From positions 62,001-126,000 of IMG/VR virus record IMGVR_UViG_3300031251_000001: a stretch of DNA of 64,000 nt; one strand, 5' to 3'. The notes under the pieces are model-generated. The model ran no database searches. It was not told where the DNA came from and was given only the letters and a program-made list of their open reading frames with translations. This document shows, piece by piece, positions 22,880 through 50,105 of the stretch (positions within the stretch are counted from its first letter, which is position 1; the number at the start of each line of letters is the position of its first letter). The position numbers and the translations under genes were made by a program.

Positions 22880-23233
22880 TTATTCCTGATCGGCTTCCGC
22901 CTCGAAAGCCACTGCTGCGGCCTCCGAGAGGACAGCATCGCTTGCCAGCTTACTGACCAGTTCGCCGAGGTCGTTTTCCTCGGTGGACTGGGTGGTGAAG
23001 CGGCTGACGATGTCGTTGGCCTGCTTGGCCACGCCGGCGAATCGATCCTGAGTAGCGATCAATCCGTGTTCCTGCGCGGTCACCAGGTCATCAGCCAGTT
23101 TGATCAGGCTGTAGCGTTCCGCATCATTTTCCGGAACCAAGTCGAAAGCGTGCTTCAGCTTATCGAACATCACGTTGTCGCGGAGTTCGGTGAGCTGACC
23201 ACGGGACCTCTCGATCACTTGGATATTGTTCAT
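22880..23233 (-). CDS. Hypothetical head-module protein
   Basis: 117 aa after the major capsid gene, with three K-x-A motifs. Confidence 0.65.
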   Translation of the reverse strand: MNNIQVIERSRGQLTELRDNVMFDKLKHAFDLVPENDAERYSLIKLADDLVTAQEHGLIATQDRFAGVAKQANDIVSRFTTQSTEENDLGELVSKLASDAVLSEAAAVAFEAEADQE

Positions 23234-23302
23234 GTTTGAATCCTTGTGTCTGTAAGTGAGGAAGAGACACCGCTAGCTTACACTAGCGGCACTCCCGTGG
23301 GA

Positions 23303-24256
23303 TTAGTATTGGATGCGGACCAAGCCGTTGGTGTTGGCGATGACAGCACCGAAGCGCTGGTACACCGACATCCTCACGACTTCTTTATGACGCTCAATAA
23401 AGAGCATCGGCTCCGACATGTAGATATGTTTGCCCAGGCAATCTGGCTTCGCAAAATAGTAAGCCTCGCCGGTCTGCACCAGGGCCTTCTTGATGGTGAT
23501 TCGCCAGGTCAAGTCGAACAGGTTGTCCTGAACCTTGAACTCCTGGGAATAGAGACCACGCTTGGCGATCAGTTCAGCGGTGTCACCACCCCATTCCTGA
23601 CGATTCCACTTGGCCACATCGAAGAAGGTGATGTGATTGACCAGGCCCACCTTGGCGGGGAAGCTGGAGGGGGTGTCGGCCAGAGTCTTGAGAGACTCGA
23701 CCAGGGACTCACGGGAGAACCCGCCGCCCACGTCCTTGTACTGGACGGAGCCGGAAGTAGCGACCGTGCTTCCCATCGTGCCGACAGCGAACTGGCAGGC
23801 CGATGTAAAGACGGTATCTTTTTCCGCTGAAAGATCTTTCGTCATGTTATCGACGACGATCTGGCGGATGTCCATGTCGTAGGTGACGAGATCGCCAACG
23901 TCGACTTGGACTTCGGGGGTTTCCACGTGCTGAACGGTGAGGCGGTAGCGATCACCACGCAGGTAGAAGTCATCGGTGCTGGAAGCGAAGGCCATGCTGA
24001 TGGCAGCAGGGCTATCGGGTTCCATGTCGAGCACGTACCCAGGGCGTGGGTCGTCGATCGACTTGTCATACCGACCCTCGGCCTTCTCGCCGGGGATAAT
24101 GTCATCAAGATACCCGGTTTCACGGAGCATCTTGCGGATGAACGATCGGATGCCGTCTTCGGCCTTCTTGGTCCGCATCGGGTCGCCACTGAGGTAGTTA
24201 TCACGCCATTGGGCGTTTGCCTGCCTCATGTCTTCCCGAGTGTATGTCTGCGTCAT
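23303..24256 (-). CDS. Major capsid protein (HK97-fold, inferred)
   Basis: 317 aa at the end of the protease-scaffold-decoration run; 'IRKMLRE.G....I.P' and C-terminal 'FG.VIAN..G'. Confidence 0.75.
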   Translation of the reverse strand: MTQTYTREDMRQANAQWRDNYLSGDPMRTKKAEDGIRSFIRKMLRETGYLDDIIPGEKAEGRYDKSIDDPRPGYVLDMEPDSPAAISMAFASSTDDFYLRGDRYRLTVQHVETPEVQVDVGDLVTYDMDIRQIVVDNMTKDLSAEKDTVFTSACQFAVGTMGSTVATSGSVQYKDVGGGFSRESLVESLKTLADTPSSFPAKVGLVNHITFFDVAKWNRQEWGGDTAELIAKRGLYSQEFKVQDNLFDLTWRITIKKALVQTGEAYYFAKPDCLGKHIYMSEPMLFIERHKEVVRMSVYQRFGAVIANTNGLVRIQY

Positions 24257-24318
24257 GCGTAATTCCTTTTACAGCATTGTGAGTTGAGGGGAAGTCAGTT
24301 CATTCCTGGTACACAGGA

Positions 24319-24873
24319 TTAGGACACAGGCCAGGACAGCCAAGTCCAGAATGCACAGGCTTCCGCCTTGCGCTGAGGATTGAGTTGAATACCACGGCTG
24401 ACGATGCCCACGATGGTGTTGGTGGGGTGAACACCGACCACCAGCTTGCCCACCGTGCCACCTGAAGTGGGGCTGGTGAGCGGAGCATTACGGACATAGT
24501 CACCGAGGTTATCGGTGTCGATTTCCGTGCTGAGCAGCTCGTAACCACCGGTGGCTACCAGGGTGTTGAACACACCAGTAGGGCCGGCAGGGACGAAGGC
24601 TCCCTTGTCAACAGAGGGATCGCCGCCGTAGTTATTCACATCAGCGTCGTACTCATTGTTGCGGAGGAACAGTGGCATCACCTTGGTGTTGCCGACACCA
24701 GGCAGCAGAGTGCCGGTGGATGTTTGGTGACAGACCATGCCTTCATAGGCGATGAGGTCGTCAGGCCAGCTCGCGTCTTGCTTGGCGCGATAATCGAGGC
24801 ACTTCTCGTTGATCTTCCAGTTTTTCAGGGCATCAAGAGTGTGCTCACCGATTCGGCGGGGCTTCGTAATCAT
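24319..24873 (-). CDS. Putative head decoration / cement protein
   Basis: 184 aa, beta-rich, directly upstream of the major capsid gene. Confidence 0.5.
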   Translation of the reverse strand: MITKPRRIGEHTLDALKNWKINEKCLDYRAKQDASWPDDLIAYEGMVCHQTSTGTLLPGVGNTKVMPLFLRNNEYDADVNNYGGDPSVDKGAFVPAGPTGVFNTLVATGGYELLSTEIDTDNLGDYVRNAPLTSPTSGGTVGKLVVGVHPTNTIVGIVSRGIQLNPQRKAEACAFWTWLSWPVS

Positions 24874-24933
24874 CGTGATCAGACCTCCATGTCGGATGCA
24901 GTTAAAGAGCCGGCCAGAGCCGGGTTAGGATTG

Positions 24934-25314
24934 TTATTGCTGACTTTCCACGAACTCATCGTTCGCTTCATCGCGACCGATGCGAATCCGGTCGCCTGCC
25001 GTCTTGGGCATGGCGCGACCAGGTCCACCGACCGTCACCTCGTCCTGTTCCTTGGAAATCATTTCAGCTACCTTGCGGAGCTTGATGAGAGCCTCGGCGT
25101 GAGAGGACAAGTTGGCAGCAGCGGTCTTACGCTGCTCATGCTTGACGAGCCCGACTTTGATAAGGGCGTCAACGGTTGGAAGGACTTCATCTTGAGCGGC
25201 CTTGTGAGCCAGCTCATGAAGAGCAATTTCCTCTGCGGACTTGGCGACCGTCGCATGCGAGATCATCGCATAGGACGCCACCTTCCGGAGGAAGTTTTGA
25301 AGTTTGGTGCTCAT
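24934..25314 (-). CDS. Hypothetical head/scaffold-associated protein
   Basis: 126 aa, helical, with six K-x-A motifs. Confidence 0.65.
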   Translation of the reverse strand: MSTKLQNFLRKVASYAMISHATVAKSAEEIALHELAHKAAQDEVLPTVDALIKVGLVKHEQRKTAAANLSSHAEALIKLRKVAEMISKEQDEVTVGGPGRAMPKTAGDRIRIGRDEANDEFVESQQ

Positions 25315-25389: not shown

Positions 25390-26673
25390 CTAGCGTGATC
25401 GGCGAATGATCTCTTCCGCGAGAGCCGCTGCGGCCTTCGGGGTGAGCTTGGTGACCTTGGCTGGCACCTTATCGGCTGCCATCTTGGGGGCACCTGCTGC
25501 GGGTGGAGGAGGAGCACCACCGCTGGCGTCAGCACCACCGGCTGCACCGGCATCGGGAGGAGGAGGTCCGCCGGCACCTGCGTCAGCACCGCCGCCTTGG
25601 GCGTGGGCCTGATCAAGCAACTGCTGGATTTCCTCATCGGACATGCCCTGCTGCTTGAGCAGCTGGACGATCTCTTCGTCGCTCATCTCGCCGCCTTCGC
25701 CACCTGGTGCACCGCCGCCTGGAGGGCCACCGGCTGCAGCATCAGGAGGAGGGGGACCGCCGCCACCCATGTCAGCACCACCGCCGCCACCGCCATCGGG
25801 TGGGGGAGGAGGAGCATCAGCAGCCCGCTTGGCGGGAGTGACGACCTTGGTTGCGGCAGCCGTCTTGGCTCGGGCATTCTTGGTCAACTGAGCCTTGGCT
25901 TCGGCGATCTTGTTGTCGGAAGCGATCTTGGATAAGTGCTGGCCTACCAGTTCAGCACGATCAGCACCAGCGCGAACGAACACCTCCAGAGTCTGGCGGC
26001 GATCTTCGGCGGATGCCTTCTTGCTGATGGTGCCGGCTACGGGAGCCTTGCCCTGGCCAACCTTAGCGTCACCGGCAGTCTTGGCACTCTTGCCAGCTGC
26101 GGGAGCCACTTCGATTTCACCGAGCATGTCGTTGATATCAAGCATCAGCTCACCAGCGGCCTTGTTGAAGGCAGGGTAGAGATCCTTGATGTCCATGGAG
26201 GCATACTTCTTGCCGTCCAGCTCCTCGTTGTCGACTCGCAGGGGAGTCGTGGAGCCTGGGTCCTCTTTCTTGTTGCTGAGGACGCCGGACAACTCGTTCT
26301 TGGGGTCTTCACCCGTCAGAGCGATGCTGTCGTTGGCAGCGGTGTGGTCCATGCCATTGTCCCCGGCAACCTTACCGGTGAGACGATTGATAATTTTGTC
26401 CATAGCGGTTTTATCCAGGGGTTCGACGCCAAGATCCTTGACGTCCTTGTCGTTTTCTTTTGCGTGACTTCCTTCCTCATTGGGCTGAGTCTGGTCGTCG
26501 ACGGTCTTGGAGGGACTTTCAGTTTTACCGTCCATGTTGGTTTCGGACGGCTGTGGTTCTGATTCAGCTTCCGCTTTCTTCTTCTTGACGGGAGCCACGG
26601 CAACGGCGGAAGCGGTCTTCCGGGTTGCAATGAGTTCGTCCAGCTGAGAAAGCAGCGAAGGTCGCTTGGACAT
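25390..26673 (-). CDS. Putative scaffolding / internal head protein
   Basis: Low-complexity, charged, with a Gly/Pro-rich tail and more than 10 K-x-A motifs. Follows the protease. Confidence 0.6.
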   Translation of the reverse strand: MSKRPSLLSQLDELIATRKTASAVAVAPVKKKKAEAESEPQPSETNMDGKTESPSKTVDDQTQPNEEGSHAKENDKDVKDLGVEPLDKTAMDKIINRLTGKVAGDNGMDHTAANDSIALTGEDPKNELSGVLSNKKEDPGSTTPLRVDNEELDGKKYASMDIKDLYPAFNKAAGELMLDINDMLGEIEVAPAAGKSAKTAGDAKVGQGKAPVAGTISKKASAEDRRQTLEVFVRAGADRAELVGQHLSKIASDNKIAEAKAQLTKNARAKTAAATKVVTPAKRAADAPPPPPDGGGGGGADMGGGGPPPPDAAAGGPPGGGAPGGEGGEMSDEEIVQLLKQQGMSDEEIQQLLDQAHAQGGGADAGAGGPPPPDAGAAGGADASGGAPPPPAAGAPKMAADKVPAKVTKLTPKAAAALAEEIIRRSR

Positions 26674-26717
26674 GTGGGAAGTTCCTTTTTGGTTATTGCA
26701 CCTGCGAGAGCCCGTAC

Positions 26718-28124
26718 TCATATATCTTGCGCTATTGTGCCCCGCAGCGTCAACGAGATGTCAACAGCGGAAGGGAGGTAGCGAGATAGTGCAGCGAGGC
26801 GGTAATCCACGTAATCGCTGGCGAGCTTCCTGCCTTCCGCGGTGACAGAAACGGAAGACAGGGTGGGACGACGTGGAGAAACAGACGAGCGGATGGCACG
26901 TGTGGTGTACCCGAACTCAATCCCTAACTCCCCGGCAACCTTGGACACGGTCGACGCCATATTGACGTTTTTGCTGTCAGCCTTGGCCCAGCGATCGGAA
27001 CGTGGATCATAGCTGTCGCACGTGTCGCGGGCTTCTTTGTACATATCGAACAAGCAGGATCGGGCAGCGCCGAGGTGATCGACTCGTCCGGACAAGGCGG
27101 CGAAATCGTTCAGGTTGGCGAAGATGCCACGGTCGGCCAGGGCAGCCAACTGATCAGGAAGATCACGAGCCGTGACGATCTTGCTGAGCTGAGGCAGGTC
27201 ACAATGCCATTGATAGGCGACGTGAGCCGGCATCTCTTCTTCGCTGAAGTCACACAGGAGACTGGCGATCTTGAACCGCATCTTGGATTCGGGACCCGCA
27301 TCGTTGGTCATCACCCAGGAGGGACCACGGATACCCATAAGCAGGGCCAGCTGAGCTGAGCCGATGATGCCGCCATCCGCCCGCTTCTTGGCGAAGTCGG
27401 AGATGGTGGCATAGGAGGTACGTCCAGCAGGGCGGTGGACCGTGGAGATATCCACGAAATAAGAATCAGGATTGAACACGCCCATCTGGACCATGTCATT
27501 CCCGACCTTCACAACCTGGCCAAGGTGCTCGGCACACCCGCCGCCGGGGCAGGTCGCTGCGGTACAGTAGTCCGCAGCTGTCTTGGCCTTGTTCTTGCAG
27601 ACGCCGCAGACGTCATGAGCCACGCGGGCACCCATTGAGATCGGCAGATCGTCACCAGCTTCGAGCCTGTTGATTTCGTAGCTGGCGACTTTACCCTTGT
27701 TCCGATCGGCAGCGGTCTTATTGCTGCTGAGACCGGCGAGCAGCTCGATGCGACCCATGTCGGGGTTGTGCATCGACGCCACGACTCGACCAAAGCTATT
27801 GGTAGGATCTTCGTCGTCGTGATTGCGGTACCAGCGGGCATACTTGACGAAGGTGTGGTGGCGGTCCTCGCATTCCTTGCGGGTCCAGCCATCACCCTTG
27901 CGGTTGAAGCCGGTGGTCTCGTGATCGGCGACCGCCAGGCCGTGCACCAGCAGCTCATCAGGGAAGAGCTTGGTGTTGGCGACCTTTCGCATCAGGTCAT
28001 CACTGGCGCGTTTACGGAACTCGTTCTTATCGTTGCCACGCAGGCCACGACGAGAAACTTTCACGGGGTAGAGCACTTGCTCGCCGTGAAAGTCGAAGTC
28101 CAGCGGGTCGACGATTTTGAACAT
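26718..28124 (-). CDS. Prohead (capsid maturation) protease
   Basis: 'N..GDGW', 'YRNH', 'ISMG' (catalytic Ser candidate), then CxxC and 'FVDIS.V..PA'. Upstream of scaffold and major capsid genes. Confidence 0.7.
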   Translation of the reverse strand: MFKIVDPLDFDFHGEQVLYPVKVSRRGLRGNDKNEFRKRASDDLMRKVANTKLFPDELLVHGLAVADHETTGFNRKGDGWTRKECEDRHHTFVKYARWYRNHDDEDPTNSFGRVVASMHNPDMGRIELLAGLSSNKTAADRNKGKVASYEINRLEAGDDLPISMGARVAHDVCGVCKNKAKTAADYCTAATCPGGGCAEHLGQVVKVGNDMVQMGVFNPDSYFVDISTVHRPAGRTSYATISDFAKKRADGGIIGSAQLALLMGIRGPSWVMTNDAGPESKMRFKIASLLCDFSEEEMPAHVAYQWHCDLPQLSKIVTARDLPDQLAALADRGIFANLNDFAALSGRVDHLGAARSCLFDMYKEARDTCDSYDPRSDRWAKADSKNVNMASTVSKVAGELGIEFGYTTRAIRSSVSPRRPTLSSVSVTAEGRKLASDYVDYRLAALSRYLPSAVDISLTLRGTIAQDI

Positions 28125-29288
28125 TTACTTCCCTACGATTTTCTTGATGTTTTCGAGTCGTGCTTGCTGTTCGGGTGAGGTATTCGGGGCGGTCAGTGAC
28201 CGGTAGATGTCGTAGCCGGCACCCATAGCCATGGGTCCCAGGGCTCGACCCATCTGTCCGCCCGGCCTGATCCCGCGAGTGAGGAAACCGCGGTAGAGCT
28301 GGGGAGCAGCGGTCACCTTGGGGGCCTTGACTCCGGCAACGCCAGCTGCGGCACCAGCACTACCAGCGGCATGAAGAGCATTGCGGCCCTTATCGGCAAA
28401 TTGCTCAGCAGCGTTGATGGAGACGGACTTGCCGGCCGTGCCCATCAATGCTGGTTTGCCGGCTTCCATGGTGTGATTACCTCTCCACTGTTTGAGCGCT
28501 TCTTTACCAGTGTCGAAGATATTGCGTGTCTTCCTGAGTTCGCGTTCCTGGAGATTACGGGCCAGGCTGTTTTGTCCTTTCTCGCCCATGTTGAGCACGT
28601 TTTTAGCGTTGTCGGAAATAGTAGCGTCGCCATGACTCTGCATGGCGTTAGCGCCTTCGACGAGGTTCCTGGGGTCGCCGAGAACTGTGGATTTTACCTT
28701 GGGGCTGAGACCGGCGTTAAGGATACCGACACCGGCACCGATGGTGGTACCAGGTGCGGCTTCAGCCAAGTCCTTGCCTTTGTCGTAACCAAAGCGAACG
28801 CCGCCCTTGATGCCTCGCTGTGCCCAGGAGGGACCAGGATCATTCTTGTAATCCTGGAAGTCCTTGGTGTGCAGCGCGTCGGTCATTTTCGACGGATCAA
28901 TGGCTCCGCCTGGATAAGAGAAGTCTCCCTTGGGGGTGACAGGCGGGGCCGCCTTGTTGAGGCTCTGATAGGCCATGCGACCACCGTAGCCCATCGCTCC
29001 ACCGACGGCAGCACCGCCAGCAGCGCGACGCAGACGATCCTTGATGCCGTTTCCGGTCAAGAGACCCGCAGCACCGCCGGCAACCGCACCGCTGACGGTG
29101 GGGTTGCTGAGGATCTGGCTACCGATGCCTTTGACTGCAGCGGGTGTTTGGACGATGGGATCACGCATGGTGTTCCCGATGCCCTTGAGCTTTTCCATGA
29201 TGGTGGACATCACGCTTGGGTCCGTCGCCTGCTTGTTGTGATAGGCGTTCCCCAGAATCTCCGCGATGTCAGCAGCGACCTTATTCAT
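28125..29288 (-). CDS. Putative internal virion protein with glycine-zipper segments
   Basis: 387 aa with GxxxG hydrophobic runs and N-terminal KVA/KQA. Confidence 0.55.
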   Translation of the reverse strand: MNKVAADIAEILGNAYHNKQATDPSVMSTIMEKLKGIGNTMRDPIVQTPAAVKGIGSQILSNPTVSGAVAGGAAGLLTGNGIKDRLRRAAGGAAVGGAMGYGGRMAYQSLNKAAPPVTPKGDFSYPGGAIDPSKMTDALHTKDFQDYKNDPGPSWAQRGIKGGVRFGYDKGKDLAEAAPGTTIGAGVGILNAGLSPKVKSTVLGDPRNLVEGANAMQSHGDATISDNAKNVLNMGEKGQNSLARNLQERELRKTRNIFDTGKEALKQWRGNHTMEAGKPALMGTAGKSVSINAAEQFADKGRNALHAAGSAGAAAGVAGVKAPKVTAAPQLYRGFLTRGIRPGGQMGRALGPMAMGAGYDIYRSLTAPNTSPEQQARLENIKKIVGK

Positions 29289-30492
29289 TGGGCTTCCTTG
29301 CTTCGCGTGGGGGAGAGATGGTGCGCTCGAGGTTACTCATCTCCTGCAGCTCAAAGGGCTGAGGAGCCGATTGCAGGGCACGACGCAGGAGCGGTTTGAG
29401 GGCTCCTGGCATGCGGGCAATGTGCGGGGCGACGGCGGCGATGTCGTTGGTCTTCTGCACAATCTTGTGCAGCGGTACATCACGGATAGGGTCATCCGGA
29501 TCGTTGATCACGTGACTGAGCACCGCCTTGGAGCGGATGCTGTTCAGATCCTGGGTGTGGTTAGGATCGTTGAGGTCGTCGTAGAGCGACTGGACCTGGC
29601 TGCCGTCCGAAGGCTTGCCCATGATGGACTGCCCCAGGGCGGTACCGATACCGATGTTGCCGATGTCACCCAGGCCGGCTTGTTTCTCGAAATCCAAAAT
29701 ACGTATTTTGGCTTGCTCCACCTGGTCGATCGCGGTCTTGACCCGATCCACGTCGGCAATGAGTTCCTTCACATAGGTGAAGGGAGCCGAGTTCAGGTTG
29801 ATCCGTCCGGTGACGACGTGATGATCACTGGCCCGCTTGTCGGTGTGCTCCAGGCCGATGTCGGTAAACAGGCCATCCATATCGAAGTCGGCGTGGACGT
29901 GCTTGCAGACCGCTTCCACGTCGGCCAGGGAGAGTCGAGAGTGTTGTGGCATCTTGAAGTAGTTGGCCAGCTTCCGCATGTTGAGCAGGGCCGTCTCGCG
30001 GGATGATTCGATATCGACGTTGAGCCGTTCGACTGTTTCGCGGTCGGCAGCCAGCTTCTTCATGATGCCGAAGAACGGACGCTCGGCCGGTTTCTCGACG
30101 TCGGAGGCCGCTTTTTGAAAGAAAACGGCCGGTACTTCGGGCAACGGGTCGACATGGAGCTGCAGCGGGGCAAAAGCGTCGCTAGCCACCTTCACCCGCG
30201 CTGCAGGTGTACTCTTGGGCTTTTCGCCGTAGACGTGGTCGATCGCTTTGTCGATGTCGGCCAGGGGCATGCTGGCCAGTTTGTCGGCGGCGGTCTTGCC
30301 TCGCTGGAATTGATCGACCTGGGCACCGGAGTTATAGATGCTGCCGGCCACGCGGATGAAGCCGGGCTGGAGGTCGAGCTCCTGGGCCGTCTTGACCAAG
30401 GCGTCCGTAGGGTGGCAATCAGCGTCGACGTGGTAACCGATGCGGTCCACGGCTCGTACCAACTTTTGTTCGTCGGCGCTAGTTAGCTTCAC
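29281..30492 (-). CDS. Putative internal virion protein
   Basis: 403 aa with about 10 K-x-A motifs. Confidence 0.6.
   Translation of the reverse strand: MKLTSADEQKLVRAVDRIGYHVDADCHPTDALVKTAQELDLQPGFIRVAGSIYNSGAQVDQFQRGKTAADKLASMPLADIDKAIDHVYGEKPKSTPAARVKVASDAFAPLQLHVDPLPEVPAVFFQKAASDVEKPAERPFFGIMKKLAADRETVERLNVDIESSRETALLNMRKLANYFKMPQHSRLSLADVEAVCKHVHADFDMDGLFTDIGLEHTDKRASDHHVVTGRINLNSAPFTYVKELIADVDRVKTAIDQVEQAKIRILDFEKQAGLGDIGNIGIGTALGQSIMGKPSDGSQVQSLYDDLNDPNHTQDLNSIRSKAVLSHVINDPDDPIRDVPLHKIVQKTNDIAAVAPHIARMPGALKPLLRRALQSAPQPFELQEMSNLERTISPPREARKPNE
29694..29711. repeat. Dispersed palindrome CCAAAATACGTATTTTGG, copy 3 (intragenic)
   Basis: 18-bp palindrome encoding AKIRILD with AT-rich codons. 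Confidence 0.95.
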
Positions 30493-43600: not shown

Positions 43601-45659
43601 CACGAGTGAAGCGGCCAGGGAACAGATCAGAGAAGGCCTGGCGGCCCTGCTTGGTCTTGTTGTCGACCTCCAGCTCGTGCTGGTAGGCGTGCTCTGAAGT
43701 CATCTTCCTGGCAAGAGAATCCGAGATGACCACGGCGTCGTTGTGATTAAGGCCCTTCCAGGGGACGTAGGCGGAGTAAGCATTGATGCCCATCGCCATG
43801 GTCCCGTGCTGATCGGTATAGTTGCTGCCGGCGAGAAGCTGACCCTTCTGTACGGTGCTGCCTTCCTGGACAATGGGTTCCTGGTTGAGCAGGGACTTAC
43901 GGTTGAAGGGCAGGTTCTTGTAGTAGGGCTTGATGCTGGTCGTGCCGTCCGGGTGCTGCATGTGGATTTCATCTTCCGTCACCTTCGTCACACGACCAGG
44001 CTTATCGGCCGCGACGGCTCCAAAACGATGACCCAACCATTGTTCGTAGGGCTGGTTGGTCTCCTCGTCCACGTTCTGTACGTGAGGAGCCTCGCGATGC
44101 TGGAGGGATAGCGCCTGCATGTACATGCGGGCACCCATGGAGTTTCGCTGTCCCTTGTTGGAGCTCTGGAACGGGATGGTGTTGGTCAGCGGGCTGAAGT
44201 TACGCGACCCGTGCGGGGAGACATAATCCAGCTCGGACTTCTTGGCATAGTCGAGCTCACCGTTGCGGATCACCGGCACATAATCATTCTTCGATTCCAT
44301 CGACTTGTAGAAGCCGATCGTCTTGCCGGCCAGGTCCTGGGGCGATCGCCACAGCTTCTTGCCGCTCTTGGGATCGATGAACTGGCTGTAGAGCCTGCCG
44401 TCGCTGCCTTTGCGTGAAGCAACGCTGGCAGAGAGATCGACGCCGGCCCGTTCCGATTCCGGTGTCTTGACGACATCAAGGAAGCCCAGGTGCGAGTTCT
44501 GCACCGAGCGGGCCTCCAGCGGGATGGCAGCTCCGGAGATGCCACCCTCACCCATGCGGGTGACGTTATGCAGGCGGTCAGCAAACTCAGAGGTATTGAT
44601 TTCTTCCAGGGGCTGGGCGACGCCGCTGCGCAGCAGGACGTGATCCAGTTGATGGGTCAGGGCACCCGAAGGCATGTGCTGCAGGTGGCCCGCTTTGGAC
44701 ATCTTGTAGAGGAGTTTCTTCTGCCAACCCTCAGAATCCTTGGCGATACGCTCGGCAAAGAGGTCTTCTGGCCCCAGGAACTTCTGATACTCGAGCGCGT
44801 CACGATCATCGGGTTTGGCCTCGCCCCGGTTGATCTTGATCAGCTTACTGGTGGCAGCCAGGAGCACGTCCTTGTTGAGCGTGGGGCTGACGTTGCCGAT
44901 CGTGCTCTTGTTGACGAACGGATTGACCTTGTAGCCCTGATACTTCTCGACGAGCTTGGCGATACGATCGACGCCCGGTGCCGCCAGCTCTTCTTTGGAG
45001 AGTAGCTTGTGAGACAGTCGATCAAGTGCGTCACGTTCCTTGACCCCGCGGTTGGACTGGGCGATCTCTTTGCCCCAGTGGTGTTCGATCTCGTCGTCCT
45101 TGGCTCCCATGGCGGTCAGCAGCGGCAGGAGGGGTGCGGTGGATCCGGCGATGTTGAGATGGAAGGTGCCCTTGTCGGGATCGAAGCCGATGCGGTGCGT
45201 CAGGCCTTCACCAGGAAGGATATTGAGGTAAGTCTCCAGTTCGCCGTTACCTTTGCGTCGGTTGTAGACGCCCGGTTCGAGACGCTGTTGGTTACGAACG
45301 GCGTACTTGGTCCCGTTACGCACGACGGTCCCGAAGTCGCTAAAGTGTGGCACGGTGGCAACGACTTGCTTGCGGGAGTCAACCATCTTGTCGGTGGCAT
45401 TGTCGTAGAGCTCCCACGTCCCTTCGACACGCCGGCCCAGCGATCCACGCGAGAGGATGGCCTTCTTGACCTCGCTGGGCTTGCGGTATTCAGGGTCGAT
45501 ATATTTGGGGTTGGTGAGCTTGAGCGTGTGCGTGCGATTCTTCACCGGGGGCAGATTCTGCATAGCACCGAGCACGTTGCCGTACACGTTTTTACGCAAC
45601 GCCCCAGTATCGCCGAACTCACGGAGGGTCACTCCCTCCGGGACTCCATCGAGATCCAT
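40635..45659 (-). CDS. Phage multisubunit-type RNA polymerase: beta fused to beta' N-terminal catalytic part, intein-containing
   Basis: Beta motifs 'KTPESERAG', 'DKLSGRFGDKGVI', 'RFMMKLHH'. Beta' motifs 'NRAPVLHK' and catalytic 'NMDFDGD'. Confidence 0.92.
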   Translation of the reverse strand: MDLDGVPEGVTLREFGDTGALRKNVYGNVLGAMQNLPPVKNRTHTLKLTNPKYIDPEYRKPSEVKKAILSRGSLGRRVEGTWELYDNATDKMVDSRKQVVATVPHFSDFGTVVRNGTKYAVRNQQRLEPGVYNRRKGNGELETYLNILPGEGLTHRIGFDPDKGTFHLNIAGSTAPLLPLLTAMGAKDDEIEHHWGKEIAQSNRGVKERDALDRLSHKLLSKEELAAPGVDRIAKLVEKYQGYKVNPFVNKSTIGNVSPTLNKDVLLAATSKLIKINRGEAKPDDRDALEYQKFLGPEDLFAERIAKDSEGWQKKLLYKMSKAGHLQHMPSGALTHQLDHVLLRSGVAQPLEEINTSEFADRLHNVTRMGEGGISGAAIPLEARSVQNSHLGFLDVVKTPESERAGVDLSASVASRKGSDGRLYSQFIDPKSGKKLWRSPQDLAGKTIGFYKSMESKNDYVPVIRNGELDYAKKSELDYVSPHGSRNFSPLTNTIPFQSSNKGQRNSMGARMYMQALSLQHREAPHVQNVDEETNQPYEQWLGHRFGAVAADKPGRVTKVTEDEIHMQHPDGTTSIKPYYKNLPFNRKSLLNQEPIVQEGSTVQKGQLLAGSNYTDQHGTMAMGINAYSAYVPWKGLNHNDAVVISDSLARKMTSEHAYQHELEVDNKTKQGRQAFSDLFPGRFTREQLGKMDDTGVIKVGQKVTHGQPLIVAAKQKGMNPNRLLRRKSDSWQDASVAWDHDHDGEVVDVQQGKKGPVVIVKSYHPTVEADKLSGRFGDKGVISKILPDSQMPHDKDGNPFELLLSPNGMISRTNAAQAHELGLGKIARKTGQPYLVKDFTGQDHDEYVRNELGKHGMKLSEEITDPETGQKIPGVATGTRFMMKLHHTSESKGQARSSGAYNQDDEPAKGGYGGCFVGTTKLWTEFGSDTIGEIVKKRKAVRVPTKVLLNENMIPVYREITDWMEYDAPRYLVVITFTDGSVVECTPGHEFFIHDTKIAANLLQPGQEIYCDGPHSAVRPYRWPGSRCPAATVRLTSLHARKDAKHIQEARPARSKADRRLGSADADVDRTDLYRGHERFPRKSSQRLYGPATLVVATIYTRFKRPGEKVYDITVEDGASYYLKNGAHVSNSKRVSLLDVNAILSHGAYEVLRDAGLVRGQRNDTYWLQYQRGQKPVEPHTTTVYQKYLAQLRAAGIDPVPDGKRTHFLAMTNKSVEDLAEGRTLKNAETVKSGEALDPVPGGLFDPEITGGHGGMKWSKIPLVTPLVNPVMEDPVKRVLGLTQGKFEDILAGKEHLNGKTGPDAIVKALEGINLDHEIATAKQAFQSGSKTKRDEAIRKLYYMMDTKRVGMHPRDWTLKSAPVIPPAYRRISTLGGSGVPMVADANPLYKELHSANEAVKDFHKEMGDDYVGPEHLTLYNALKAVTGLGDPVTKKSKERNVRGVLQHIFGSNPKMGTVQRRLIGSAVDQVGRSVVVPNPDLNMDQIGIPKRLAFDVYKKEIVRDMVRRGRTVANAMESINQQDDEAHRSLLRVMDQKPVQMNRAPVLHKLGYMGFRPQLVAGNAVHVPTLVLKGFNMDFDGDASQFHVPATEEAAKETYERMLPSKHLISPTDRKTPVAMPSQEYVGGLYELTSNKSKRPLRTFRNIQDVLKALEQRTIDPHDEVEILQDKG
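42264..42914 (-). mobile_element. Intein (217 aa, no homing endonuclease) in the RNAP gene
   Basis: GG|CFVGTT block A, 'ECTPGHEFF' block B, 'VYDITVE' block F and 'HVSN|S' C-terminal junction. Confidence 0.9.
42371..42622 (-). CDS. Nested 83-aa ORF inside the intein (+1 frame)
   Basis: AGGAG 10 nt before the ATG, GC-ending codon bias, and boundaries matching the intein linker. Confidence 0.6.
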   Translation of the reverse strand: MDPTQQSAPIDGQEAAAPQRPYVLPAFTPERTQSIFKKLDQPGPKPTADLVRRMRTSIGQTFTGAMSGFLGKVHNAFMGRPRS

Positions 45660-45662
45660 GTA

Positions 45663-46433
45663 TTACTCCGCTGAGGCACCAGCCAGGACGGGCGGTTGGC
45701 TGAGGCTGCCAGGCAAGATGATTTCCGTGGGAGCTGAACGAGCACGATTGGCCTGTCGCATGGACAGTGCCTTCTGGAGGGCCTTGCGATTCTTATCTTT
45801 GCTGGCACTATAGGCCAGGGCGCCGGCACCGAGACCGGTACCGACAGCATAGAGGCCGTAACCCTTGAGTGCGCCATCGACAATGTCCTGTAATCCGGCG
45901 TTCTTCTTGACGGTGTCAAAGAGGATTACCAGGCAATCACCCAGGTCGCAGTCACTGGCCAGCTTGCTGACGGGAGCCAGGGTCTTGGTCAAAGCCGCAT
46001 CGAACTGAGCACGAGCGTTTTCTTCCTTGGCCTTGCGGTTGCTGGCTGCCATGCGACCGGCGGTGCTGCGGATGAGACCAGCAGTACCGACACCAGCGAT
46101 CAAACCACCGGCCAGGGCAGCCGGGGATTTCCACCAGACGTGGTCGGAGTCGAGAGCGTTGTTGGCGTGGAGGGCGTCGCGGATGATGTTGTCATCGGCT
46201 GTTTTGACGGGCAAGATGGCTTCTTCGGGGCTGGTCCGCTTGGTGACGCGGGGGTCTTGTTTCTTGAGCATTCGGTAGAGGGCGTAGCCGCCACCGGTGA
46301 GGAGACCAGCACCCACGCCGGCTTTGATCGTGTTGCCGACGTCGCCGACAGCCTGCTGCTTGGCGACGTCATTCGCAGCACCACGAAACGCCGACTCAAA
46401 GTTAGGGTAGCCTGTGCCGCTCATAGTCGCCAT
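45663..46433 (-). CDS. Putative internal virion protein with three glycine-zipper segments
   Basis: 256 aa; hydrophobic GxxxG segments separated by KTA/KLA/KNA. Confidence 0.65.
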   Translation of the reverse strand: MATMSGTGYPNFESAFRGAANDVAKQQAVGDVGNTIKAGVGAGLLTGGGYALYRMLKKQDPRVTKRTSPEEAILPVKTADDNIIRDALHANNALDSDHVWWKSPAALAGGLIAGVGTAGLIRSTAGRMAASNRKAKEENARAQFDAALTKTLAPVSKLASDCDLGDCLVILFDTVKKNAGLQDIVDGALKGYGLYAVGTGLGAGALAYSASKDKNRKALQKALSMRQANRARSAPTEIILPGSLSQPPVLAGASAE

Positions 46434-47122
46434 CCTTGGTTACTAGGCAATTCGATCTCGGTTTCCTTCACGGCGACCCACACCATGAAGATTTTTCGCT
46501 TCTCTTGATCGTACTGGATTTTTATGCAGTCACACAAGCACTCCTTAGCCAGGATGGAGTCCAGGGCCACGTGGAAGCGAGCCATGCTCTCGGCGTCAAG
46601 GATATCGAAGATCCCGCTATCAGTGTAGTAGTTCTTGACCCGCCGTACCGTCGTCTCCTCGTCTTCGACTTCTCCTTTATTCTCGCCCAGACCAGTGATT
46701 TGCGTGACCAGGTCGATGGCAGTGTGGAAGATGGTGTCGGTCGGACTGAGGGCTCGTACTGCCTCGGTGCGGTTGAAGTTGAACTGGCTCTTGGACATTT
46801 CGACGTTGTAGTTAACGCCCCAGACGGTGAAGATGTATCGCTCTTCCTCGTCGAAGAGGACGTTGTTGTGGAAGATGCTGAACCAGCCGGAATACTGACG
46901 ATCGATGAGACCGTTGTACTCTTTCATGTCGCTGGGATTGAAAGCATCAAACACACGGCTGTAGGACAAGACCTTGTGGCCCCGCCGTTCCAGCCGTTCT
47001 TCTTCTGTGAGGAGGGAGTTCTGCTTGCCGAGGAAGGGGAAAGGATCATCACCTACGCGACCAAAACTGGCCTCCGGTGTCGTGTCAGCGAACCGGAGGA
47101 TAGGACTGAGTTCAGTGGTCAT
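46421..47122 (-). CDS. Hypothetical protein with internal duplication
   Basis: Two related halves: VFD...IFTVW and IFD...IFMVW. Confidence 0.7.
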   Translation of the reverse strand: MTTELSPILRFADTTPEASFGRVGDDPFPFLGKQNSLLTEEERLERRGHKVLSYSRVFDAFNPSDMKEYNGLIDRQYSGWFSIFHNNVLFDEEERYIFTVWGVNYNVEMSKSQFNFNRTEAVRALSPTDTIFHTAIDLVTQITGLGENKGEVEDEETTVRRVKNYYTDSGIFDILDAESMARFHVALDSILAKECLCDCIKIQYDQEKRKIFMVWVAVKETEIELPSNQGWRL

Positions 47123-47493
47123 GGTGCTAGCGAGGGAGCCCTGAGTGGTTGACGCGATCTCTTTTGTAACTTGGACAGGCGACGAAGTCTATCCGTCTCC
47201 GTCTGGTAGGCACTCGTCAACTCCTGCGACTTGATGTCGTCGATGTCGGCGGCAGGGTCGGTATCGGTCATGCGGGCCAGACCGTGGCCGGCTGCGGCAC
47301 CGAGCAGGGGAGGAGCTACCAGGCCGGCCAGGATAGCGGGCTTGGCGACACCAGCCAGGGTGTCGAGAACACCACCGGCATGCTTGACCCGTTCGGTCAT
47401 GTCGCGGGCGACCTTCTTCATCTGTTCGATGGAGAGCCCCTTGAGCGTGCACTCGGTCAGGAACCCGGCGGCAAATTGTTGGTATTCGGTCAT
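47119..47493 (-). CDS. Putative internal virion protein
   Basis: Starts MTEYQQFAAGFL..C; KHA followed by a hydrophobic segment. Confidence 0.65.
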   Translation of the reverse strand: MTEYQQFAAGFLTECTLKGLSIEQMKKVARDMTERVKHAGGVLDTLAGVAKPAILAGLVAPPLLGAAAGHGLARMTDTDPAADIDDIKSQELTSAYQTETDRLRRLSKLQKRSRQPLRAPSLAP

Positions 47494-47501
47494 AGGATGT
47501 C

Positions 47502-47933
47502 CTAGAATCGGAACCACTTGGGTAGACGTCCCCGGTGTCGCTCGGGGCCTTGAGGATCTTCCGGGGCACCGTGTTCGCGGGCGGCCCGTACCAGCCTCAT
47601 TCCATCATCATACCACTGTTTCACGGTTTCTTTCTTCTTGACGCCGAGCATCTCCAACTTCATGCCCCGATAATCGCGATCGTCACCATTCTGGAAGTGG
47701 TGCTGATAGATGTCTTTGAAGAGATCGAGTGTTGCCTCGAACTGGGTCGGAGTGACACTCCCCCATTGTCCGGTTTTCTCGTCGAGGCGGTGGATGACGC
47801 CGCCTTCATGCCAGAAGGTCAGAGCACCGATCTTGACCAACTCATGGTTAACAGCGGAGACAATGTGCTTGCCGTCCGCTCCCAGAATCCCCGGTGTCTT
47901 GGCCTGTTTACTGGCCAGTAACAGTGTTGCCAT
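47502..47933 (-). CDS. Hypothetical protein
   Basis: 143 aa, GGAG RBS. Confidence 0.65.
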   Translation of the reverse strand: MATLLLASKQAKTPGILGADGKHIVSAVNHELVKIGALTFWHEGGVIHRLDEKTGQWGSVTPTQFEATLDLFKDIYQHHFQNGDDRDYRGMKLEMLGVKKKETVKQWYDDGMRLVRAAREHGAPEDPQGPERHRGRLPKWFRF

Positions 47934-47944
47934 CTCTCCCCCGG

Positions 47945-47964
47945 TCCAAAATACGTATTTTGGA
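47945..47964. repeat. Dispersed palindrome TCCAAAATACGTATTTTGGA, copy 4
   Basis: 20-bp perfect palindrome abutting the upstream stop codon. Confidence 0.95.
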
Positions 47965-48957
47965 TTAGCCGAATAACTTGGGTAGCGCCAGGTTGACGAT
48001 ACCCACCGCTGCTCCGTAATTCCCCCAACTCTTGTCGGGCATCCCGGTGGCGATGTTCAGCGCTTTGCCCACCACCTTGCCCATAACGTACCCTTGTCCC
48101 GCCGCCATCGCAAGCTGACCTAGCTGATTAGCGGTCACCCAGCCTGGCGTCGCGTTGTCATCCGGGAACTGCTGAGCGGCGTGCATAACCCCCATCGTCG
48201 CTCCGGTGATCGGTGCCGGGGCCTGCCCCTGCCAGAGGGTCTGACCCAGAGCATTGACGTTGATGTCACCAGGATTAGACTGTGCGGGTTCGGCCCCCTC
48301 ATAGCCAATGGTATCCATCGCTACTTTGGGGATGGGCACATGGGGTGTCTGGTGGAAAGGCACGACCGAGGGAACTGGTTCTATCGGTTCCTGCACACCA
48401 GGCCAACCATCTGTCATGCTGTGCCCGTTAGCGTGGTTGGTCAGAGCCCACAACGCCCCAGGGGCGGCACCGAGGAGGCCACCCATCAAGGCACCATTAC
48501 GTCGCAGCCTCTTCTTGTCCCAGCCATCTGGTGTTTTGGAGGCAACCAGGGAACCGGCACCATAGCCCAGGCCCGTACCCAGGAGCCCTGAAGCGATCAT
48601 GGCAGCCAGGGGTGAGGGGGCATTGGGGATGCCAGTCGTGGAAGGCAGGAATTGAAGAGCCTCCAGCCCCTCCCGCAAGGGCCTCGACTCGGCCACCTTG
48701 ATCCAGCTGTCCTGGCGTGCCTCTTCAGCGGTGATCGGCATTTTCTGGACAGGGAGAGCTGAGCACTTGGCGAGCTTCCGCAGATAGGCTACCGGCAGAT
48801 CGGTTTGAATATCGAAGGCGACTTTGCGAGTGAGCGGGTTGGCGTAGATCCGCACCGGACCTGGTAGCAGGAAGAGGTGGGGACGCAGGCTGGCAGCCAC
48901 CGGGCGGGCGAAGGCTGCATACTCGTCGATGCGGTCGGTGATGGTGTCCCAACTCAT
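47965..48957 (-). CDS. Putative internal virion protein with glycine zippers
   Basis: 330 aa with GLLGTGLGYGAG, GGLLGAAPG and several KVA motifs. Confidence 0.65.
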   Translation of the reverse strand: MSWDTITDRIDEYAAFARPVAASLRPHLFLLPGPVRIYANPLTRKVAFDIQTDLPVAYLRKLAKCSALPVQKMPITAEEARQDSWIKVAESRPLREGLEALQFLPSTTGIPNAPSPLAAMIASGLLGTGLGYGAGSLVASKTPDGWDKKRLRRNGALMGGLLGAAPGALWALTNHANGHSMTDGWPGVQEPIEPVPSVVPFHQTPHVPIPKVAMDTIGYEGAEPAQSNPGDINVNALGQTLWQGQAPAPITGATMGVMHAAQQFPDDNATPGWVTANQLGQLAMAAGQGYVMGKVVGKALNIATGMPDKSWGNYGAAVGIVNLALPKLFG

Positions 48958-50105
48958 TTGAGGAGCCCCTCGATACGGAGGATGTCGAGGATACGCTGCA
49001 GCTGCTTGGCTACCGGGCCTTCAGCTCGCACGGCCCGATCGTCGAGGTAGACGTCAGCGTAGATCTTGTTGGAGCCGCCTTCGGGCTGGAATGGGCTGTC
49101 ATTGATGTAATCGAACTCGACGCCGGCAGCTTTAAGGTGGCTGGTGAGCAAGAGCCGATCGCTGCGAACGGTCCAGATGCAGATCGTGCAGCCCAGCTTC
49201 TTGAGGGCGTTGACCAGGATCACCATCTGTGGTTTGACGGGGCCGATCTTGGTGTTGTCGAACGGCTCCATTGTCTCGCAGAGGGTGCCGTCGACATCGA
49301 TCGCGACGATAGGTTTACGGTCGCCGGCATACTTCTGCCATCGCCGCAGGAGAGCGGCACTGGCCCGCTTGCGAAAGGCACGATCGACAAAAGGAAAAGG
49401 ATCAACCGCCAGCTTCACCAGCTCCTCCATATCGGAGAAAGTGGGGGCGACAGCAAGCTGGGAAGCAGCCTTGCGAACAAGTTTCTTCCAGCTCGCTACA
49501 AACACCGAGTCACGGTCAGTACGAACACCCCGAGCGTAGTCTTCGTACCAATTAAGCCAGGCGGTCTTGCGGCGTGTATCCAGAAGCCCGAAGCGGGCCA
49601 GATCAGAGACAGTATAGTCGGGAGTGAAGTCAAAGGCACGCTTGGCTGCCTTGCCGCCGGGGAGGAAGTCTTCTTCGCTCACCTCGGACTGGGTGTCTCC
49701 TCTTTCCAGCCACCATTCCAACTGATAGGGAGTGACGGCTACGATGCTGCCAAAGCCGGTCCAGCCTTCTTTGTAGCAGCTGAGATATGCTTCCTTGGCC
49801 TCTTGGGCGGAACCTGGTCCCAGGATGACTTTGTGCTCGTCGAATGCACCAGACTGCTTAACCTGGTTAATGATAAAGGCAACGTCGTTTTGGTATGGAT
49901 CAGAATCGATAAACACATCGACATGATCGCCATCATCGTCCGTTGATGAATCGGGAAAGTAACCGTAGTGAAGTGGGAGATCAACTCCATGACGCACCTG
50001 GCCTTTAGCATACTCCAGGGCAATAGGGATGCCCTTCCACTTGAGCTCCCTGATCGTCGGCCTGTCCTTGGCGATCTTATCCGGCATCGTTAGTTCCAGA
50101 TTCAT
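48954..50105 (-). CDS. Inorganic pyrophosphatase-like domain fused to HAD-superfamily hydrolase
   Basis: N-terminal 'HYGYF...DGDHVDVF...FDEHKVILG'. C-terminal 'IDVDGTL...IWTVR...KIYADVYLDDRA'. Confidence 0.8.
   Translation of the reverse strand: MNLELTMPDKIAKDRPTIRELKWKGIPIALEYAKGQVRHGVDLPLHYGYFPDSSTDDDGDHVDVFIDSDPYQNDVAFIINQVKQSGAFDEHKVILGPGSAQEAKEAYLSCYKEGWTGFGSIVAVTPYQLEWWLERGDTQSEVSEEDFLPGGKAAKRAFDFTPDYTVSDLARFGLLDTRRKTAWLNWYEDYARGVRTDRDSVFVASWKKLVRKAASQLAVAPTFSDMEELVKLAVDPFPFVDRAFRKRASAALLRRWQKYAGDRKPIVAIDVDGTLCETMEPFDNTKIGPVKPQMVILVNALKKLGCTICIWTVRSDRLLLTSHLKAAGVEFDYINDSPFQPEGGSNKIYADVYLDDRAVRAEGPVAKQLQRILDILRIEGLLK

What the first reader, a model, noticed from the sequence alone, without database searches (positions are those of the whole stretch)
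22880..50105. Pervasive K-x-A motif marks a protease-processed, probably packaged protein set that includes the transcription machinery
Seen: K-x-A followed mostly by S/A/G/D/E recurs densely across the head module. Examples: scaffold (KTAS, KVAG, KYAS, KIAS, KRAA, KMAA), 29281-30492 (KTAA, KVAS, KAAS, KRAS, KQAG), 32036-34483 (KRAD, KTAD, KSAG, KQAD), the protease itself (KRAS, KVAS, KRAD), the major capsid N-terminus (KKAE), 39805, 45663, 47119, 47965, the PPase/HAD protein and RNAP beta'-C (KVAS, KTAD). It often falls at domain boundaries, and by eye it is much sparser in sheath, tube and baseplate proteins. Known: large-phage prohead proteases (T4 gp21, phiKZ gp175) cut many internal head proteins at a short motif. 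Inference: K-x-A is the site for the 26718-28124 protease, and the ~27-kb block encodes an injected kit including RNAP.
Basis: partly seen in the sequence, partly recalled or inferred. Interest (0 to 1): 0.78.

Follow-up and report, generated by a model that had tools for sequence, protein, structure and literature searches.

The report
Lys-x-Ala cleavage motif of a phage head protease
In this uncultured 214-kb jumbo phage and its many relatives, a short Lys-x-Ala motif is packed into the head-assembly proteins and is most likely the cutting site of the phage's T4-gp21-like capsid maturation protease, a specificity I could not find described for phage head proteases.

Summary
K-x-A occurs 112 times in the head block against 56 expected from composition shuffles (z 8.2). 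It is at expectation in the tail block (25 vs 28) and in the rest of the genome (225 vs 232). It ranks first among 1,448 gapped residue pairs. The motif in this phage is longer, K-x-A-x-D: 42 observed against 3.8 expected.

Seven head-block proteins carry most of the excess. Four small proteins add 6 K-x-A-x-D sites against 0.4 expected. The two RNA polymerase subunits are not enriched.

The 26718-28124 protein has the T4 gp21 protease fold (Z 12.2). Its orthologues keep a K-x-A in the disordered linker after the catalytic domain.

The excess recurs in the orthologous proteins of six distant relatives, including cultured Salmonella phage Arash. The capsid protein's N-terminal K30-x-A32 is kept in 116 of 142 diverged representatives.

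K-x-A is also over-represented just after the conserved core of RNA polymerase beta'-C in 90 orthologues that carry a C-terminal extension. This suggests a single cut there.

Cleavage itself is inferred, not shown, and so is packaging of the polymerase. Verdict: a new variant of a known kind of system.

The parts
26718..28124 (-). Prohead maturation protease, 468 aa. Catalytic domain is aa 1-231 (27432-28124), followed by a disordered linker (aa 231-275) and a helical C-terminal domain. Candidate catalytic residues: H102 (27819-27821) and S163 (27636-27638).
   Evidence: AF2 model: N-domain pLDDT 80-94. T4 gp21 5jbl_A Z 12.2, rmsd 3.4 A over 149 of 165 residues; VZV protease Z 6.0. 29 BFVD hits at E<=1e-3, many named prohead protease. 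H102 and S163 are invariant in 14 homologues and line up by eye with T4 H85 and S140. K.A 11 vs 2.7.
27378..27386 (-). K247-R-A249 in the protease linker: predicted self-cleavage site that would separate the catalytic domain from the C-terminal domain.
   Evidence: K247 and A249 are invariant in 14 homologues of 23-56% identity. The site lies in the pLDDT<50 segment 231-275. Translation checked.
25390..26721 (-). Scaffold-like protein, 443 aa, between the protease and the capsid gene. It has 16 K-x-A, six of them K-x-A-x-D.
   Evidence: K.A 16 vs 6.6, K.A[SAGDE] 13 vs 3.2. Sites listed. The proteins at the same position in relatives are enriched. The scaffold role is inferred from position and composition only.
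24934..25314 (-). 126-aa head-module protein with 6 K-x-A.
   Evidence: 6 vs 1.6, z 3.9. The 138-150-aa proteins at the same position in L001, L002, L008 and L009 have 5 each. BLAST link to L008.
23303..24256 (-). Major capsid protein, 317 aa, HK97 fold.
   Evidence: Profile hit to PDB 6wkk_A 'Gp27 major capsid protein', E 1.4e-6. ESM Atlas TM 0.87-0.93 to capsid clusters. Homologous to Arash gp226, annotated major capsid protein.
24155..24169 (-). K30-K-A32-E-D34 in the capsid protein: predicted maturation site that would remove about 32 N-terminal residues.
   Evidence: K and A are invariant in 6 orthologues. Among 142 representatives, each under 50% identical to the others, K is kept in 126, A in 123 and both in 116, while neighbouring columns vary. 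Translation checked.
22880..23233 (-). 117-aa protein with four K-x-A-x-D sites (K27, K45, K70, K95).
   Evidence: 4 vs 0.7 K.A. 4 vs 0.06 K.A.D. The L001 orthologue has 5 vs 0.8.
28125..29288 (-). 387-aa protein with two K-x-A-x-D at its extreme N-terminus (K3, K19). K.A overall is not enriched.
   Evidence: A short N-terminal propeptide is inferred only.
29281..30492 (-). 403-aa head protein. Its 11 K-x-A all lie in aa 34-270, leaving a site-free C-terminal 133 aa.
   Evidence: 11 vs 3.0, z 5.2. BLAST orthologues in L001, L002 and L008 have 11, 14 and 14.
32036..34483 (-). 815-aa head protein with 12 K-x-A clustered at aa 35-348 and 569-632.
   Evidence: 12 vs 3.8. Orthologues in L001, L002 and L008 have 12, 12 and 15. 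The atlas gives only weak leads to MuF_C and polyvalent-protein clusters, score about 0.5.
34994..38695 (-). RNA polymerase beta'-C, 1233 aa. The conserved core ends near aa 620 and is followed by a roughly 600-aa extension of unknown function. K.A is not enriched.
   Evidence: PF04998 E 1.3e-19. 5 vs 6.8 K.A. The core end coincides with the C-termini of the 631-aa L001 and 606-aa Arash orthologues.
36764..36778 (-). K640-V-A-S-D644, about 20 residues after the beta'-C core: candidate single processing site.
   Evidence: L002 has KAAEDA at the equivalent spot. L008 has KRASLE at aa 622. In 90 orthologues with extensions of at least 100 aa, K.A in the 70 aa after the core end is 107 vs 57.9, while A.K is 45 vs 58. 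The sequences are not independent.
40635..45659 (-). RNA polymerase beta fused to beta'-N, 1674 aa including an intein. No K-x-A excess and no K-x-A-x-D. Listed as context, not as a predicted substrate.
   Evidence: PF00562, PF00623, PF04565. 8 vs 8.9. It is the only beta gene in the genome.
39805..40632 (-). 275-aa protein with KTADG (K19) and KQASD (K238).
   Evidence: K.A[SAGDE] 3 vs 0.4. One of four small proteins with 6 K.A.D vs 0.40 expected together.
45663..46433 (-). 256-aa protein with KTADD (K77) and KLASD (K157).
47119..47517 (-). 132-aa protein with KVARD (K35) and KHAGG (K45).
47965..48957 (-). 330-aa protein with KVAFD (K45) and KVAMD (K211).
48954..50105 (-). Two-domain enzyme, 383 aa: InPase pyrophosphatase (aa 19-134) and a HAD-like phosphatase (aa 257-379). 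It has 10 K-x-A, seven of them in the interdomain stretch aa 145-258.
   Evidence: PF18823 E 2.2e-28. PHROG hits place this InPase domain inside minor head, virion structural and DarB-like proteins. 10 vs 2.4, z 5.3. Positions.

Best explanation
K-x-A, extended in this phage to K-x-A-x-D, is the recognition motif of the capsid maturation protease encoded at 26718-28124. By analogy with T4 gp21, phiKZ gp175 and the herpesvirus assemblins, the motif reads Lys at P3 and Ala at P1, a small residue (often Ser) at P1', and Asp at P2'. The cut would fall after the Ala.

Shown here:
- The motif excess, its restriction to a set of head-module proteins, and its recurrence in orthologues.
- The gp21-like fold of the protease.
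- Conservation of single sites at the capsid protein N-terminus and in the protease linker.

Inferred:
- Inside the prohead the protease trims about 32 residues off the capsid protein.
- It frees its own catalytic domain at K247-x-A249.
- It chops the scaffold-like protein and the N-terminal parts of the 403-aa and 815-aa proteins into small pieces.
- It separates the two enzyme domains of the PPase/HAD protein.
- It probably severs RNA polymerase beta'-C from its C-terminal extension at one junction site.

That the products stay in the head and enter the host cell is a further inference from T4, phiKZ and SPN3US biology.
For: Statistics in this phage. Positive control on T4. No paralogy among the head proteins.

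Protease identity:
- Fold match to T4 gp21, Z 12.2, well above the next hits.
- BFVD matches named prohead protease.
- Invariant H102 and S163 sit in local motifs that resemble T4 gp21 around H85 and S140.
- The gene lies directly upstream of the scaffold-like and capsid genes.

Conservation across relatives:
- The excess recurs in L001, L002, L008, L009, Arash and L014.
- With orthology set by BLAST independently of the motif, orthologues of enriched proteins are enriched. Orthologues of non-enriched proteins are not.
- Arash genes outside the head module are at expectation, 36 vs 34.2.
- Pooled sites in relatives prefer Ser at P1' (63 vs 16) and L/M/F at P5.

Single conserved sites:
- Capsid K30 and A32 are kept in 116 of 142 diverged representatives.
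- Protease K247 and A249 are invariant in a disordered linker.
- K.A is in excess just after the beta'-C core.

Precedent: SPN3US gp245 cuts after A-x-E with Ser preferred at P1'. It uses multiple sites per propeptide and removes its own C-terminal propeptide (PMC10052503).
Against: No proteolysis data exist for this phage or any relative.
- The Arash paper gives coverage values only: capsid 86.6%, protease homologue 84.9%. These are compatible with trimming but not diagnostic.
- The position of the scissile bond is by analogy only.
- Catalytic residues were matched by eye, because profile comparison with T4 gp21 and HK97 gp4 found nothing usable. Pfam and PHROGs give no protease family.
- The complex prediction of protease with the capsid N-terminal peptide gave no answer.
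- Conserved K-x-A in the capsid N-arm could in principle be structural.
- Some K-x-A in the protease domain are evidently fold elements.
- The z-scores for relatives' 'core' sets and for the beta'-C junction are inflated. The first suffers from my choice of sets, the second from the relatedness of the sequences.
Confidence: 0.75

Rival explanations
1. K-x-A is a conserved docking or capsid-targeting motif that is not cleaved. It would bind the scaffold, the portal or the inner capsid wall and so recruit proteins into the prohead.
For: The evidence that fits cleavage also fits this reading: restriction to head proteins, conservation and location in linkers. The K-x-A just after the beta'-C core could serve recruitment.
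Against: Up to 16 copies per protein spread along whole propeptide-like regions fit degradation better than docking. The P3/P1 geometry with Ser at P1' matches the sites of proteases of this fold. An invariant site in the protease's own disordered linker is the classic self-processing arrangement.
Confidence: 0.12
2. The motif is a cleavage site, but for a different enzyme: a host protease or another phage protease, not the 26718-28124 product.
For: No biochemical link ties the motif to this protein. Most phage genes here have no assigned function.
Against: No other protease family was found in the head block. The motif travels with this protease family across hosts as different as Salmonella (Arash) and the unknown hosts of the metagenomic relatives. 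The protease itself carries conserved sites.
Confidence: 0.06
3. The excess comes from composition, helical periodicity or shared ancestry of repeats, with no function.
For: The head proteins are richer in Lys and Ala than the tail proteins.
Against: Per-protein shuffles already remove composition. A.K, KA, K..A and K...A are at expectation. There are no paralogues or repeats. The excess is kept in orthologues of 21-37% identity.
Confidence: 0.01

Closest known systems
T4 gp21 prohead protease (MEROPS S77) and its L/I-x-E sites
   Same: Same fold (Z 12.2). Local His and Ser motifs resemble each other. The gene order protease, scaffold, capsid is the same. Both use a three-residue motif with determinants two residues apart, many sites in the scaffold and one in the capsid N-terminus. 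The same statistical scan recovers I.E and L.E in T4.
   Different: No detectable sequence-family membership. The motif is K-x-A rather than L/I-x-E, so the inferred P1 is Ala, not Glu. The protein is twice as long, with a helical C-terminal domain. An invariant four-Cys insertion follows the candidate Ser.
phiKZ gp175 and SPN3US gp245 proteases of giant phages (S/A/G-x-E or A-x-E sites)
   Same: Giant phages with many processed head proteins and long multi-site propeptides. The protease removes its own C-terminal part, Ser is preferred at P1', and the virion carries a multisubunit RNA polymerase (PMC10052503).
   Different: A different motif. The capsid protein here is small (317 aa). Only one polymerase gene set is present rather than a virion set plus a non-virion set. 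Beta and beta'-N are fused. The nearest cultured relatives are Arash and Vibrio phages D69, D148 and D181, not phiKZ-like phages.
Herpesvirus assemblins (S21), sites V/L/I-x-A then Ser
   Same: Related fold: VZV protease Z 6.0, HCMV protease Z 4.2. From my own knowledge, they have Ala at P1 and Ser at P1', as inferred here.
   Different: P3 is Lys here rather than an aliphatic residue. This phage also has a strong Asp preference at P2'. There is no sequence similarity.
Salmonella phage Arash (OQ632216), an unclassified 'orphan' myovirus
   Same: Shared gene order from polymerase beta' through protease to capsid. Homologous protease, capsid and polymerase at 24-32% identity. K-x-A excess in gp220, gp222, gp223 and gp225, and KEA at capsid residue 27. 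A sigma factor gene sits among the tail genes.
   Different: No Asp preference at +4. Beta'-C lacks the long extension and a helicase gene follows it. The published paper does not mention a protease or processing: one search found 0 occurrences of 'protease'.

Membership tests
gp21/assemblin-fold prohead serine proteases | Protease-domain fold | tested here: met
   VIA-align: Z 12.2 to T4 gp21 5jbl_A over model residues 1-231. The next hit is VZV protease at Z 6.0. 29 BFVD hits at E<=1e-3, many named prohead protease. Foldseek against PDB alone was not significant.
gp21/assemblin-fold prohead serine proteases | Conserved catalytic His and Ser | tested here: inconclusive
   H102 and S163 are invariant in 14 homologues. 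They sit in N-H and (I/L)-P-x-S contexts like T4 H85 and S140. The third residue is unassigned; D225 is a candidate.
gp21/assemblin-fold prohead serine proteases | Sequence-family membership (Pfam Peptidase_S77 or S78) | tested here: not met
   No Pfam hit for any of the 14 members even at E<=10. The only PHROG match is phrog_2774, function unknown. hhalign against T4 gp21 and HK97 gp4 found nothing usable.
gp21/assemblin-fold prohead serine proteases | Gene sits next to the scaffold and major capsid genes | tested here: met
   The order protease, scaffold-like, two small genes, capsid is seen here and in L001, L002, L008, L009 and Arash.
gp21/assemblin-fold prohead serine proteases | Proteolytic activity and self-processing | not testable with these tools
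   Only indirect evidence: an invariant K247-x-A249 in a disordered linker.
Protease-processed head protein sets (T4, phiKZ, SPN3US type) | Short motif over-represented in scaffold and internal head proteins but not in tail proteins | tested here: met
   T4 control.
Protease-processed head protein sets (T4, phiKZ, SPN3US type) | Motif retained in orthologues despite sequence divergence | tested here: met
Protease-processed head protein sets (T4, phiKZ, SPN3US type) | Mature N-termini mapping to the motif | not testable with these tools
   No peptide-level data. The Arash paper reports coverage values only.
Virion-packaged multisubunit RNA polymerase (phiKZ vRNAP type) | Phage-encoded beta and beta' genes | tested here: met
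   PF00562, PF00623, PF04565 and PF04998.
Virion-packaged multisubunit RNA polymerase (phiKZ vRNAP type) | A second, non-virion polymerase gene set | tested here: not met
   One beta match and one beta'-C gene in the 214-kb genome, which CheckV rates 100% complete.
Virion-packaged multisubunit RNA polymerase (phiKZ vRNAP type) | Polymerase subunits present in virions | not testable with these tools
   Only in the distant relative Arash: gp206 has the most spectra and gp216 is among the top five, in a list of 116 proteins (PMC10585845).

The most novel reading that the evidence does not exclude
In this phage clade the RNA polymerase beta' C-terminal subunit is made as a precursor. A variable extension of several hundred residues would serve to load the polymerase into the prohead. 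The prohead protease would then cut it off at a K-x-A site about 20-60 residues after the polymerase core. If so, capsid maturation and arming of the injected transcription machine would be one step, and K-x-A would mark the whole packaged proteome of a large, mostly uncultured group of phages.
Probability: 0.3. Interest if true: 0.8.

Novelty: new variant of a known kind. Interest (0 to 1): 0.62.

Why it matters
Prohead proteases with a short motif are well known. The motifs established for large phages all end in Glu (T4 L/I-x-E; phiKZ and SPN3US S/A/G-x-E). A Lys-x-Ala specificity, closer to the Ala-Ser sites of herpesvirus assemblins, would widen the known range of this protease fold.

It would also give a sequence-only way to predict which proteins are processed and packaged in a large clade. 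That clade has 1,227 capsid clusters at 50% identity and more than 200 beta'-C homologues, many from contigs above 200 kb. Most of its genes have no assigned function.

One cultured member, Salmonella phage Arash, already has virion mass-spectrometry data, so the prediction can be tested quickly.

Tried and rejected
- PHROGs and Pfam on nearly all head and tail proteins gave almost nothing. The hits were RNA polymerase domains, InPase, Baseplate_J, a sigma factor and a methylase.
- Nucleotide search of the phage collection and a viral-contig scan with the protease found nothing.
- Profile search of PDB sequences with the protease family gave no hit.
- Foldseek against PDB gave only HCMV protease at E about 1. 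VIA-align was needed to see the fold.
- hhalign of the protease family against HK97 gp4 and T4 gp21 gave nothing usable. The only match was a 5-residue stretch, S-R-R-G-L (family consensus S-S-R-G-L) against T4 S140-S-R-G-L. It lies at the wrong end of the domain, so I treat it as chance.
- Complex prediction of protease domain plus capsid N-terminal peptide returned no answer, score 0.21 below the 0.32 mark. It counts neither for nor against.
- The AF2 model of the capsid protein from 5 sequences was unusable, pLDDT 35. Capsid identity was settled instead.
- The beta'-C extension is not homologous to the Arash helicase that follows beta' there.
- Full-text search for K-X-A, KXA or Lys-X-Ala returned nothing about phages.
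- K-x-S as an alternative P1: it is modestly raised at the beta'-C junction but not enriched in the head proteins of L014. It is therefore not adopted as part of the motif.

Full report
**Setting.** The window is bases 62001-126000 of a single-contig 214,229-bp virus record. IMG/VR and CheckV rate it complete. GC content is about 59%. Almost all genes from 7 to 52719 run on the minus strand. I used the longest ORFs on the strand of the gene chain as the gene set. Start codons were not refined.

**The observation.**
- Against 2,000 shuffles of each protein's own composition, K.A is 112 vs 56.2 in the head block 22880-50105 (z 8.2). It is 25 vs 28.3 in the tail block and 6 vs 14.5 in the other window genes.
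- Of 240 proteins of at least 80 aa in the genome, eight reach p<=0.001. Seven of them lie in the head block. The 218 proteins outside it total 225 vs 232.
- An unbiased scan of 1,448 residue pairs at gaps 0-3 ranks K.A first (z 7.5), K...D second and A.D fourth. KA, K..A, K...A and A.K are at expectation. This excludes local Lys/Ala richness as the cause.
- The head proteins share no paralogous segments.
- The same scan on T4 gp20, 67, 68, 21, 22, 23 and 24 returns I.E first and L.E sixth, which is the known gp21 motif. The method therefore finds real protease motifs.

**Refined motif.** Around the 110 scorable sites, Asp occupies +4 in 41 cases against 7.6 expected. Ser, Ala or Gly are favoured at +3, and Arg at -1. 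Counts for K.A.D:

| Set | Observed | Expected |
|---|---|---|
| Head block | 42 | 3.80 (maximum of 5,000 shuffles: 13) |
| Tail block | 1 | 1.85 |
| Other window genes | 0 | 0.77 |
| Four small proteins (39805, 45663, 47119, 47965) | 6 | 0.40 |
| Two polymerase subunits | 1 | 1.03 |

The Asp was found in the same data, so these figures are descriptive.

**The protease.**
- Fourteen homologues of 23-56% identity share invariant H61, H102, S163 and four Cys (C173, C176, C187, C192). They also share K-x-A at K38/A40, K136/A138 and K247/A249.
- The AF2 model has a confident domain at residues 1-230, a disordered linker at 231-275 that holds K247-x-A249, and a helical C-terminal domain.
- Sequence libraries and Foldseek against PDB gave nothing significant.
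- VIA-align puts T4 gp21 (5jbl_A) first at Z 12.2 with 149 of 165 residues aligned. VZV protease follows at Z 6.0 and HCMV protease at Z 4.2.
- BFVD gives 29 hits at E<=1e-3, many named prohead protease.
- By eye, T4 N-H85, K126-L-A-A and I-P-G-V-S140 correspond to N-H102, K136-T-A-A and L-P-I-S163 here. H102 and S163 are therefore the likely catalytic pair. K136-x-A138 is a fold element rather than a site.

**Relatives.**
- Contigs carrying homologous proteases keep the same gene order: L001, L002, L008, L009 and the cultured Salmonella phage Arash.
- K.A is three- to four-fold over expectation in the proteins at the positions of our enriched ones, and at expectation in their neighbours. I chose those 'core' sets knowing the counts.
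- therefore sets orthology by BLAST alone. Orthologues of 32036-34483, 29281-30492, the protease, 24934-25314 and 22880-23233 are enriched. Orthologues of 30479-31600, 24319-24873, the capsid protein, beta'-C and tail gene 20065-21048 are not. The one exception is the L009 orthologue of the sheath-like 15445-18279, which shows a mild excess (6 vs 1.9, z 3.3).
- A sixth relative, L014, was reached through beta'-C. There K.A is again the top pattern and K...D the fourth.
- The first 50 kb of Arash (terminase, tail and metabolic genes) shows 36 vs 34.2.
- Pooled sites in relatives prefer Ser at +3 (63 vs 16), L/M/F at -2 and Glu at -1. Asp at +4 is not general.

**Capsid protein.** Gene 23303-24256 encodes the major capsid protein. 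K30 and A32 are invariant in six orthologues. A profile search of 1.84 billion representatives found 1,227 relatives. Among 142 near-full-length ones, each under 50% identical to the others, K is kept in 126, A in 123 and both in 116. Asp or Glu is at +4 in 81, while positions 29, 31 and 33 vary freely. This conservation equals that of the best core residues.

**RNA polymerase.**
- The genome has one beta/beta'-N fusion and one beta'-C gene. Neither is enriched.
- The beta'-C core ends near residue 620, where the L001 and Arash proteins stop. Ours continues for about 600 residues, and KVASD lies at 640.
- Of 120 orthologues, 90 have extensions of at least 100 aa.
- In the 70 residues after the core end, K.A is 107 vs 57.9, K.S is 57 vs 38.6 and A.K is 45 vs 58. 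Asp or Glu is again favoured at +4.
- These sequences are related to one another, so the z-score overstates the case. The direction still supports one processing site at the junction.
- Arash virion mass spectrometry lists the polymerase subunits among the most abundant proteins. It also lists 116 proteins in total, including a ligase and a primase, so carry-over cannot be excluded (PMC10585845).

**Interpretation.** The best reading is a gp21-type prohead protease whose specificity is K-x-A, with Asp at P2' in this lineage. It would act on the capsid N-terminus, on itself, on the scaffold-like protein, on several internal head proteins, on a two-domain phosphatase and probably on beta'-C. Placing the cut after Ala rests on analogy with gp21, gp175 and gp245 (PMC10052503) and, from my own knowledge, with herpesvirus Ala-Ser sites. 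No cleavage has been observed. I found no description of this motif in the searchable literature, which is weak negative evidence.

Noticed in passing
window 42264-42914 (-), aa 916-1132 of the 40635-45659 protein: A 217-aa mini-intein interrupts the RNA polymerase beta part. It starts C-F-V-G-T-T, contains T-P-G-H-E-F-F and ends H-V-S-N followed by Ser. It is absent from Arash gp206. Pfam Intein_splicing matches only weakly (E 0.0067). Many beta'-C orthologues elsewhere also carry intein domains.
   Followed up: partly
window 2530-3240 (-): A sigma-70-like protein (Sigma70_r3 E 6e-7, region 4 weak) is encoded among the baseplate and tail genes. Arash has its sigma factor gp10 in the same kind of place, and it was detected in virions.
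   Followed up: partly
outside the window: genome 40230-41408 (+), L010:6231-7409: An eighth K-x-A-rich protein: 392 aa, 15 sites vs 3.0 expected, z 7.9. It has no Pfam, PHROG or phage tblastn match. It lies about 2 kb from the large terminase gene (genome 36378-38351, GpA_ATPase). It may be another protease substrate encoded away from the head block.
   Followed up: partly
window 27549-27608 (-), protease aa 173-192: Four invariant cysteines (C173, C176, C187, C192) form a zinc-ribbon-like insertion right after the candidate catalytic Ser. T4 gp21 has nothing comparable at the corresponding place.
   Followed up: no
window 28041-28055 (-), protease aa 24-28: The conserved S-R-R-G-L (family consensus S-S-R-G-L) matches the pentapeptide around the T4 gp21 catalytic Ser140. 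It sits near the N-terminus, out of register with the structural alignment. Probably chance (hhalign E 0.09), but unexplained.
   Followed up: partly
beta'-C orthologues P0018-P0072, 40-60 aa after the core end: Many extensions begin with a conserved G-F-F-S-G-L-F-K-x-S-x-(E/D) element. Our protein lacks it. One orthologue (P0119, 1774 aa) carries SNF2 helicase and NUDIX domains in its extension, whereas Arash has a separate helicase gene after beta'.
   Followed up: no
window 52974-58844 (+): A 1956-aa ORF on the opposite strand has no Pfam match and very low Lys content (1.8%). Its function is unknown.
   Followed up: no
window 60962-63232 (-): A 756-aa protein with a C-5 cytosine DNA methylase domain (PF00145, E 4.8e-28).
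   Followed up: no
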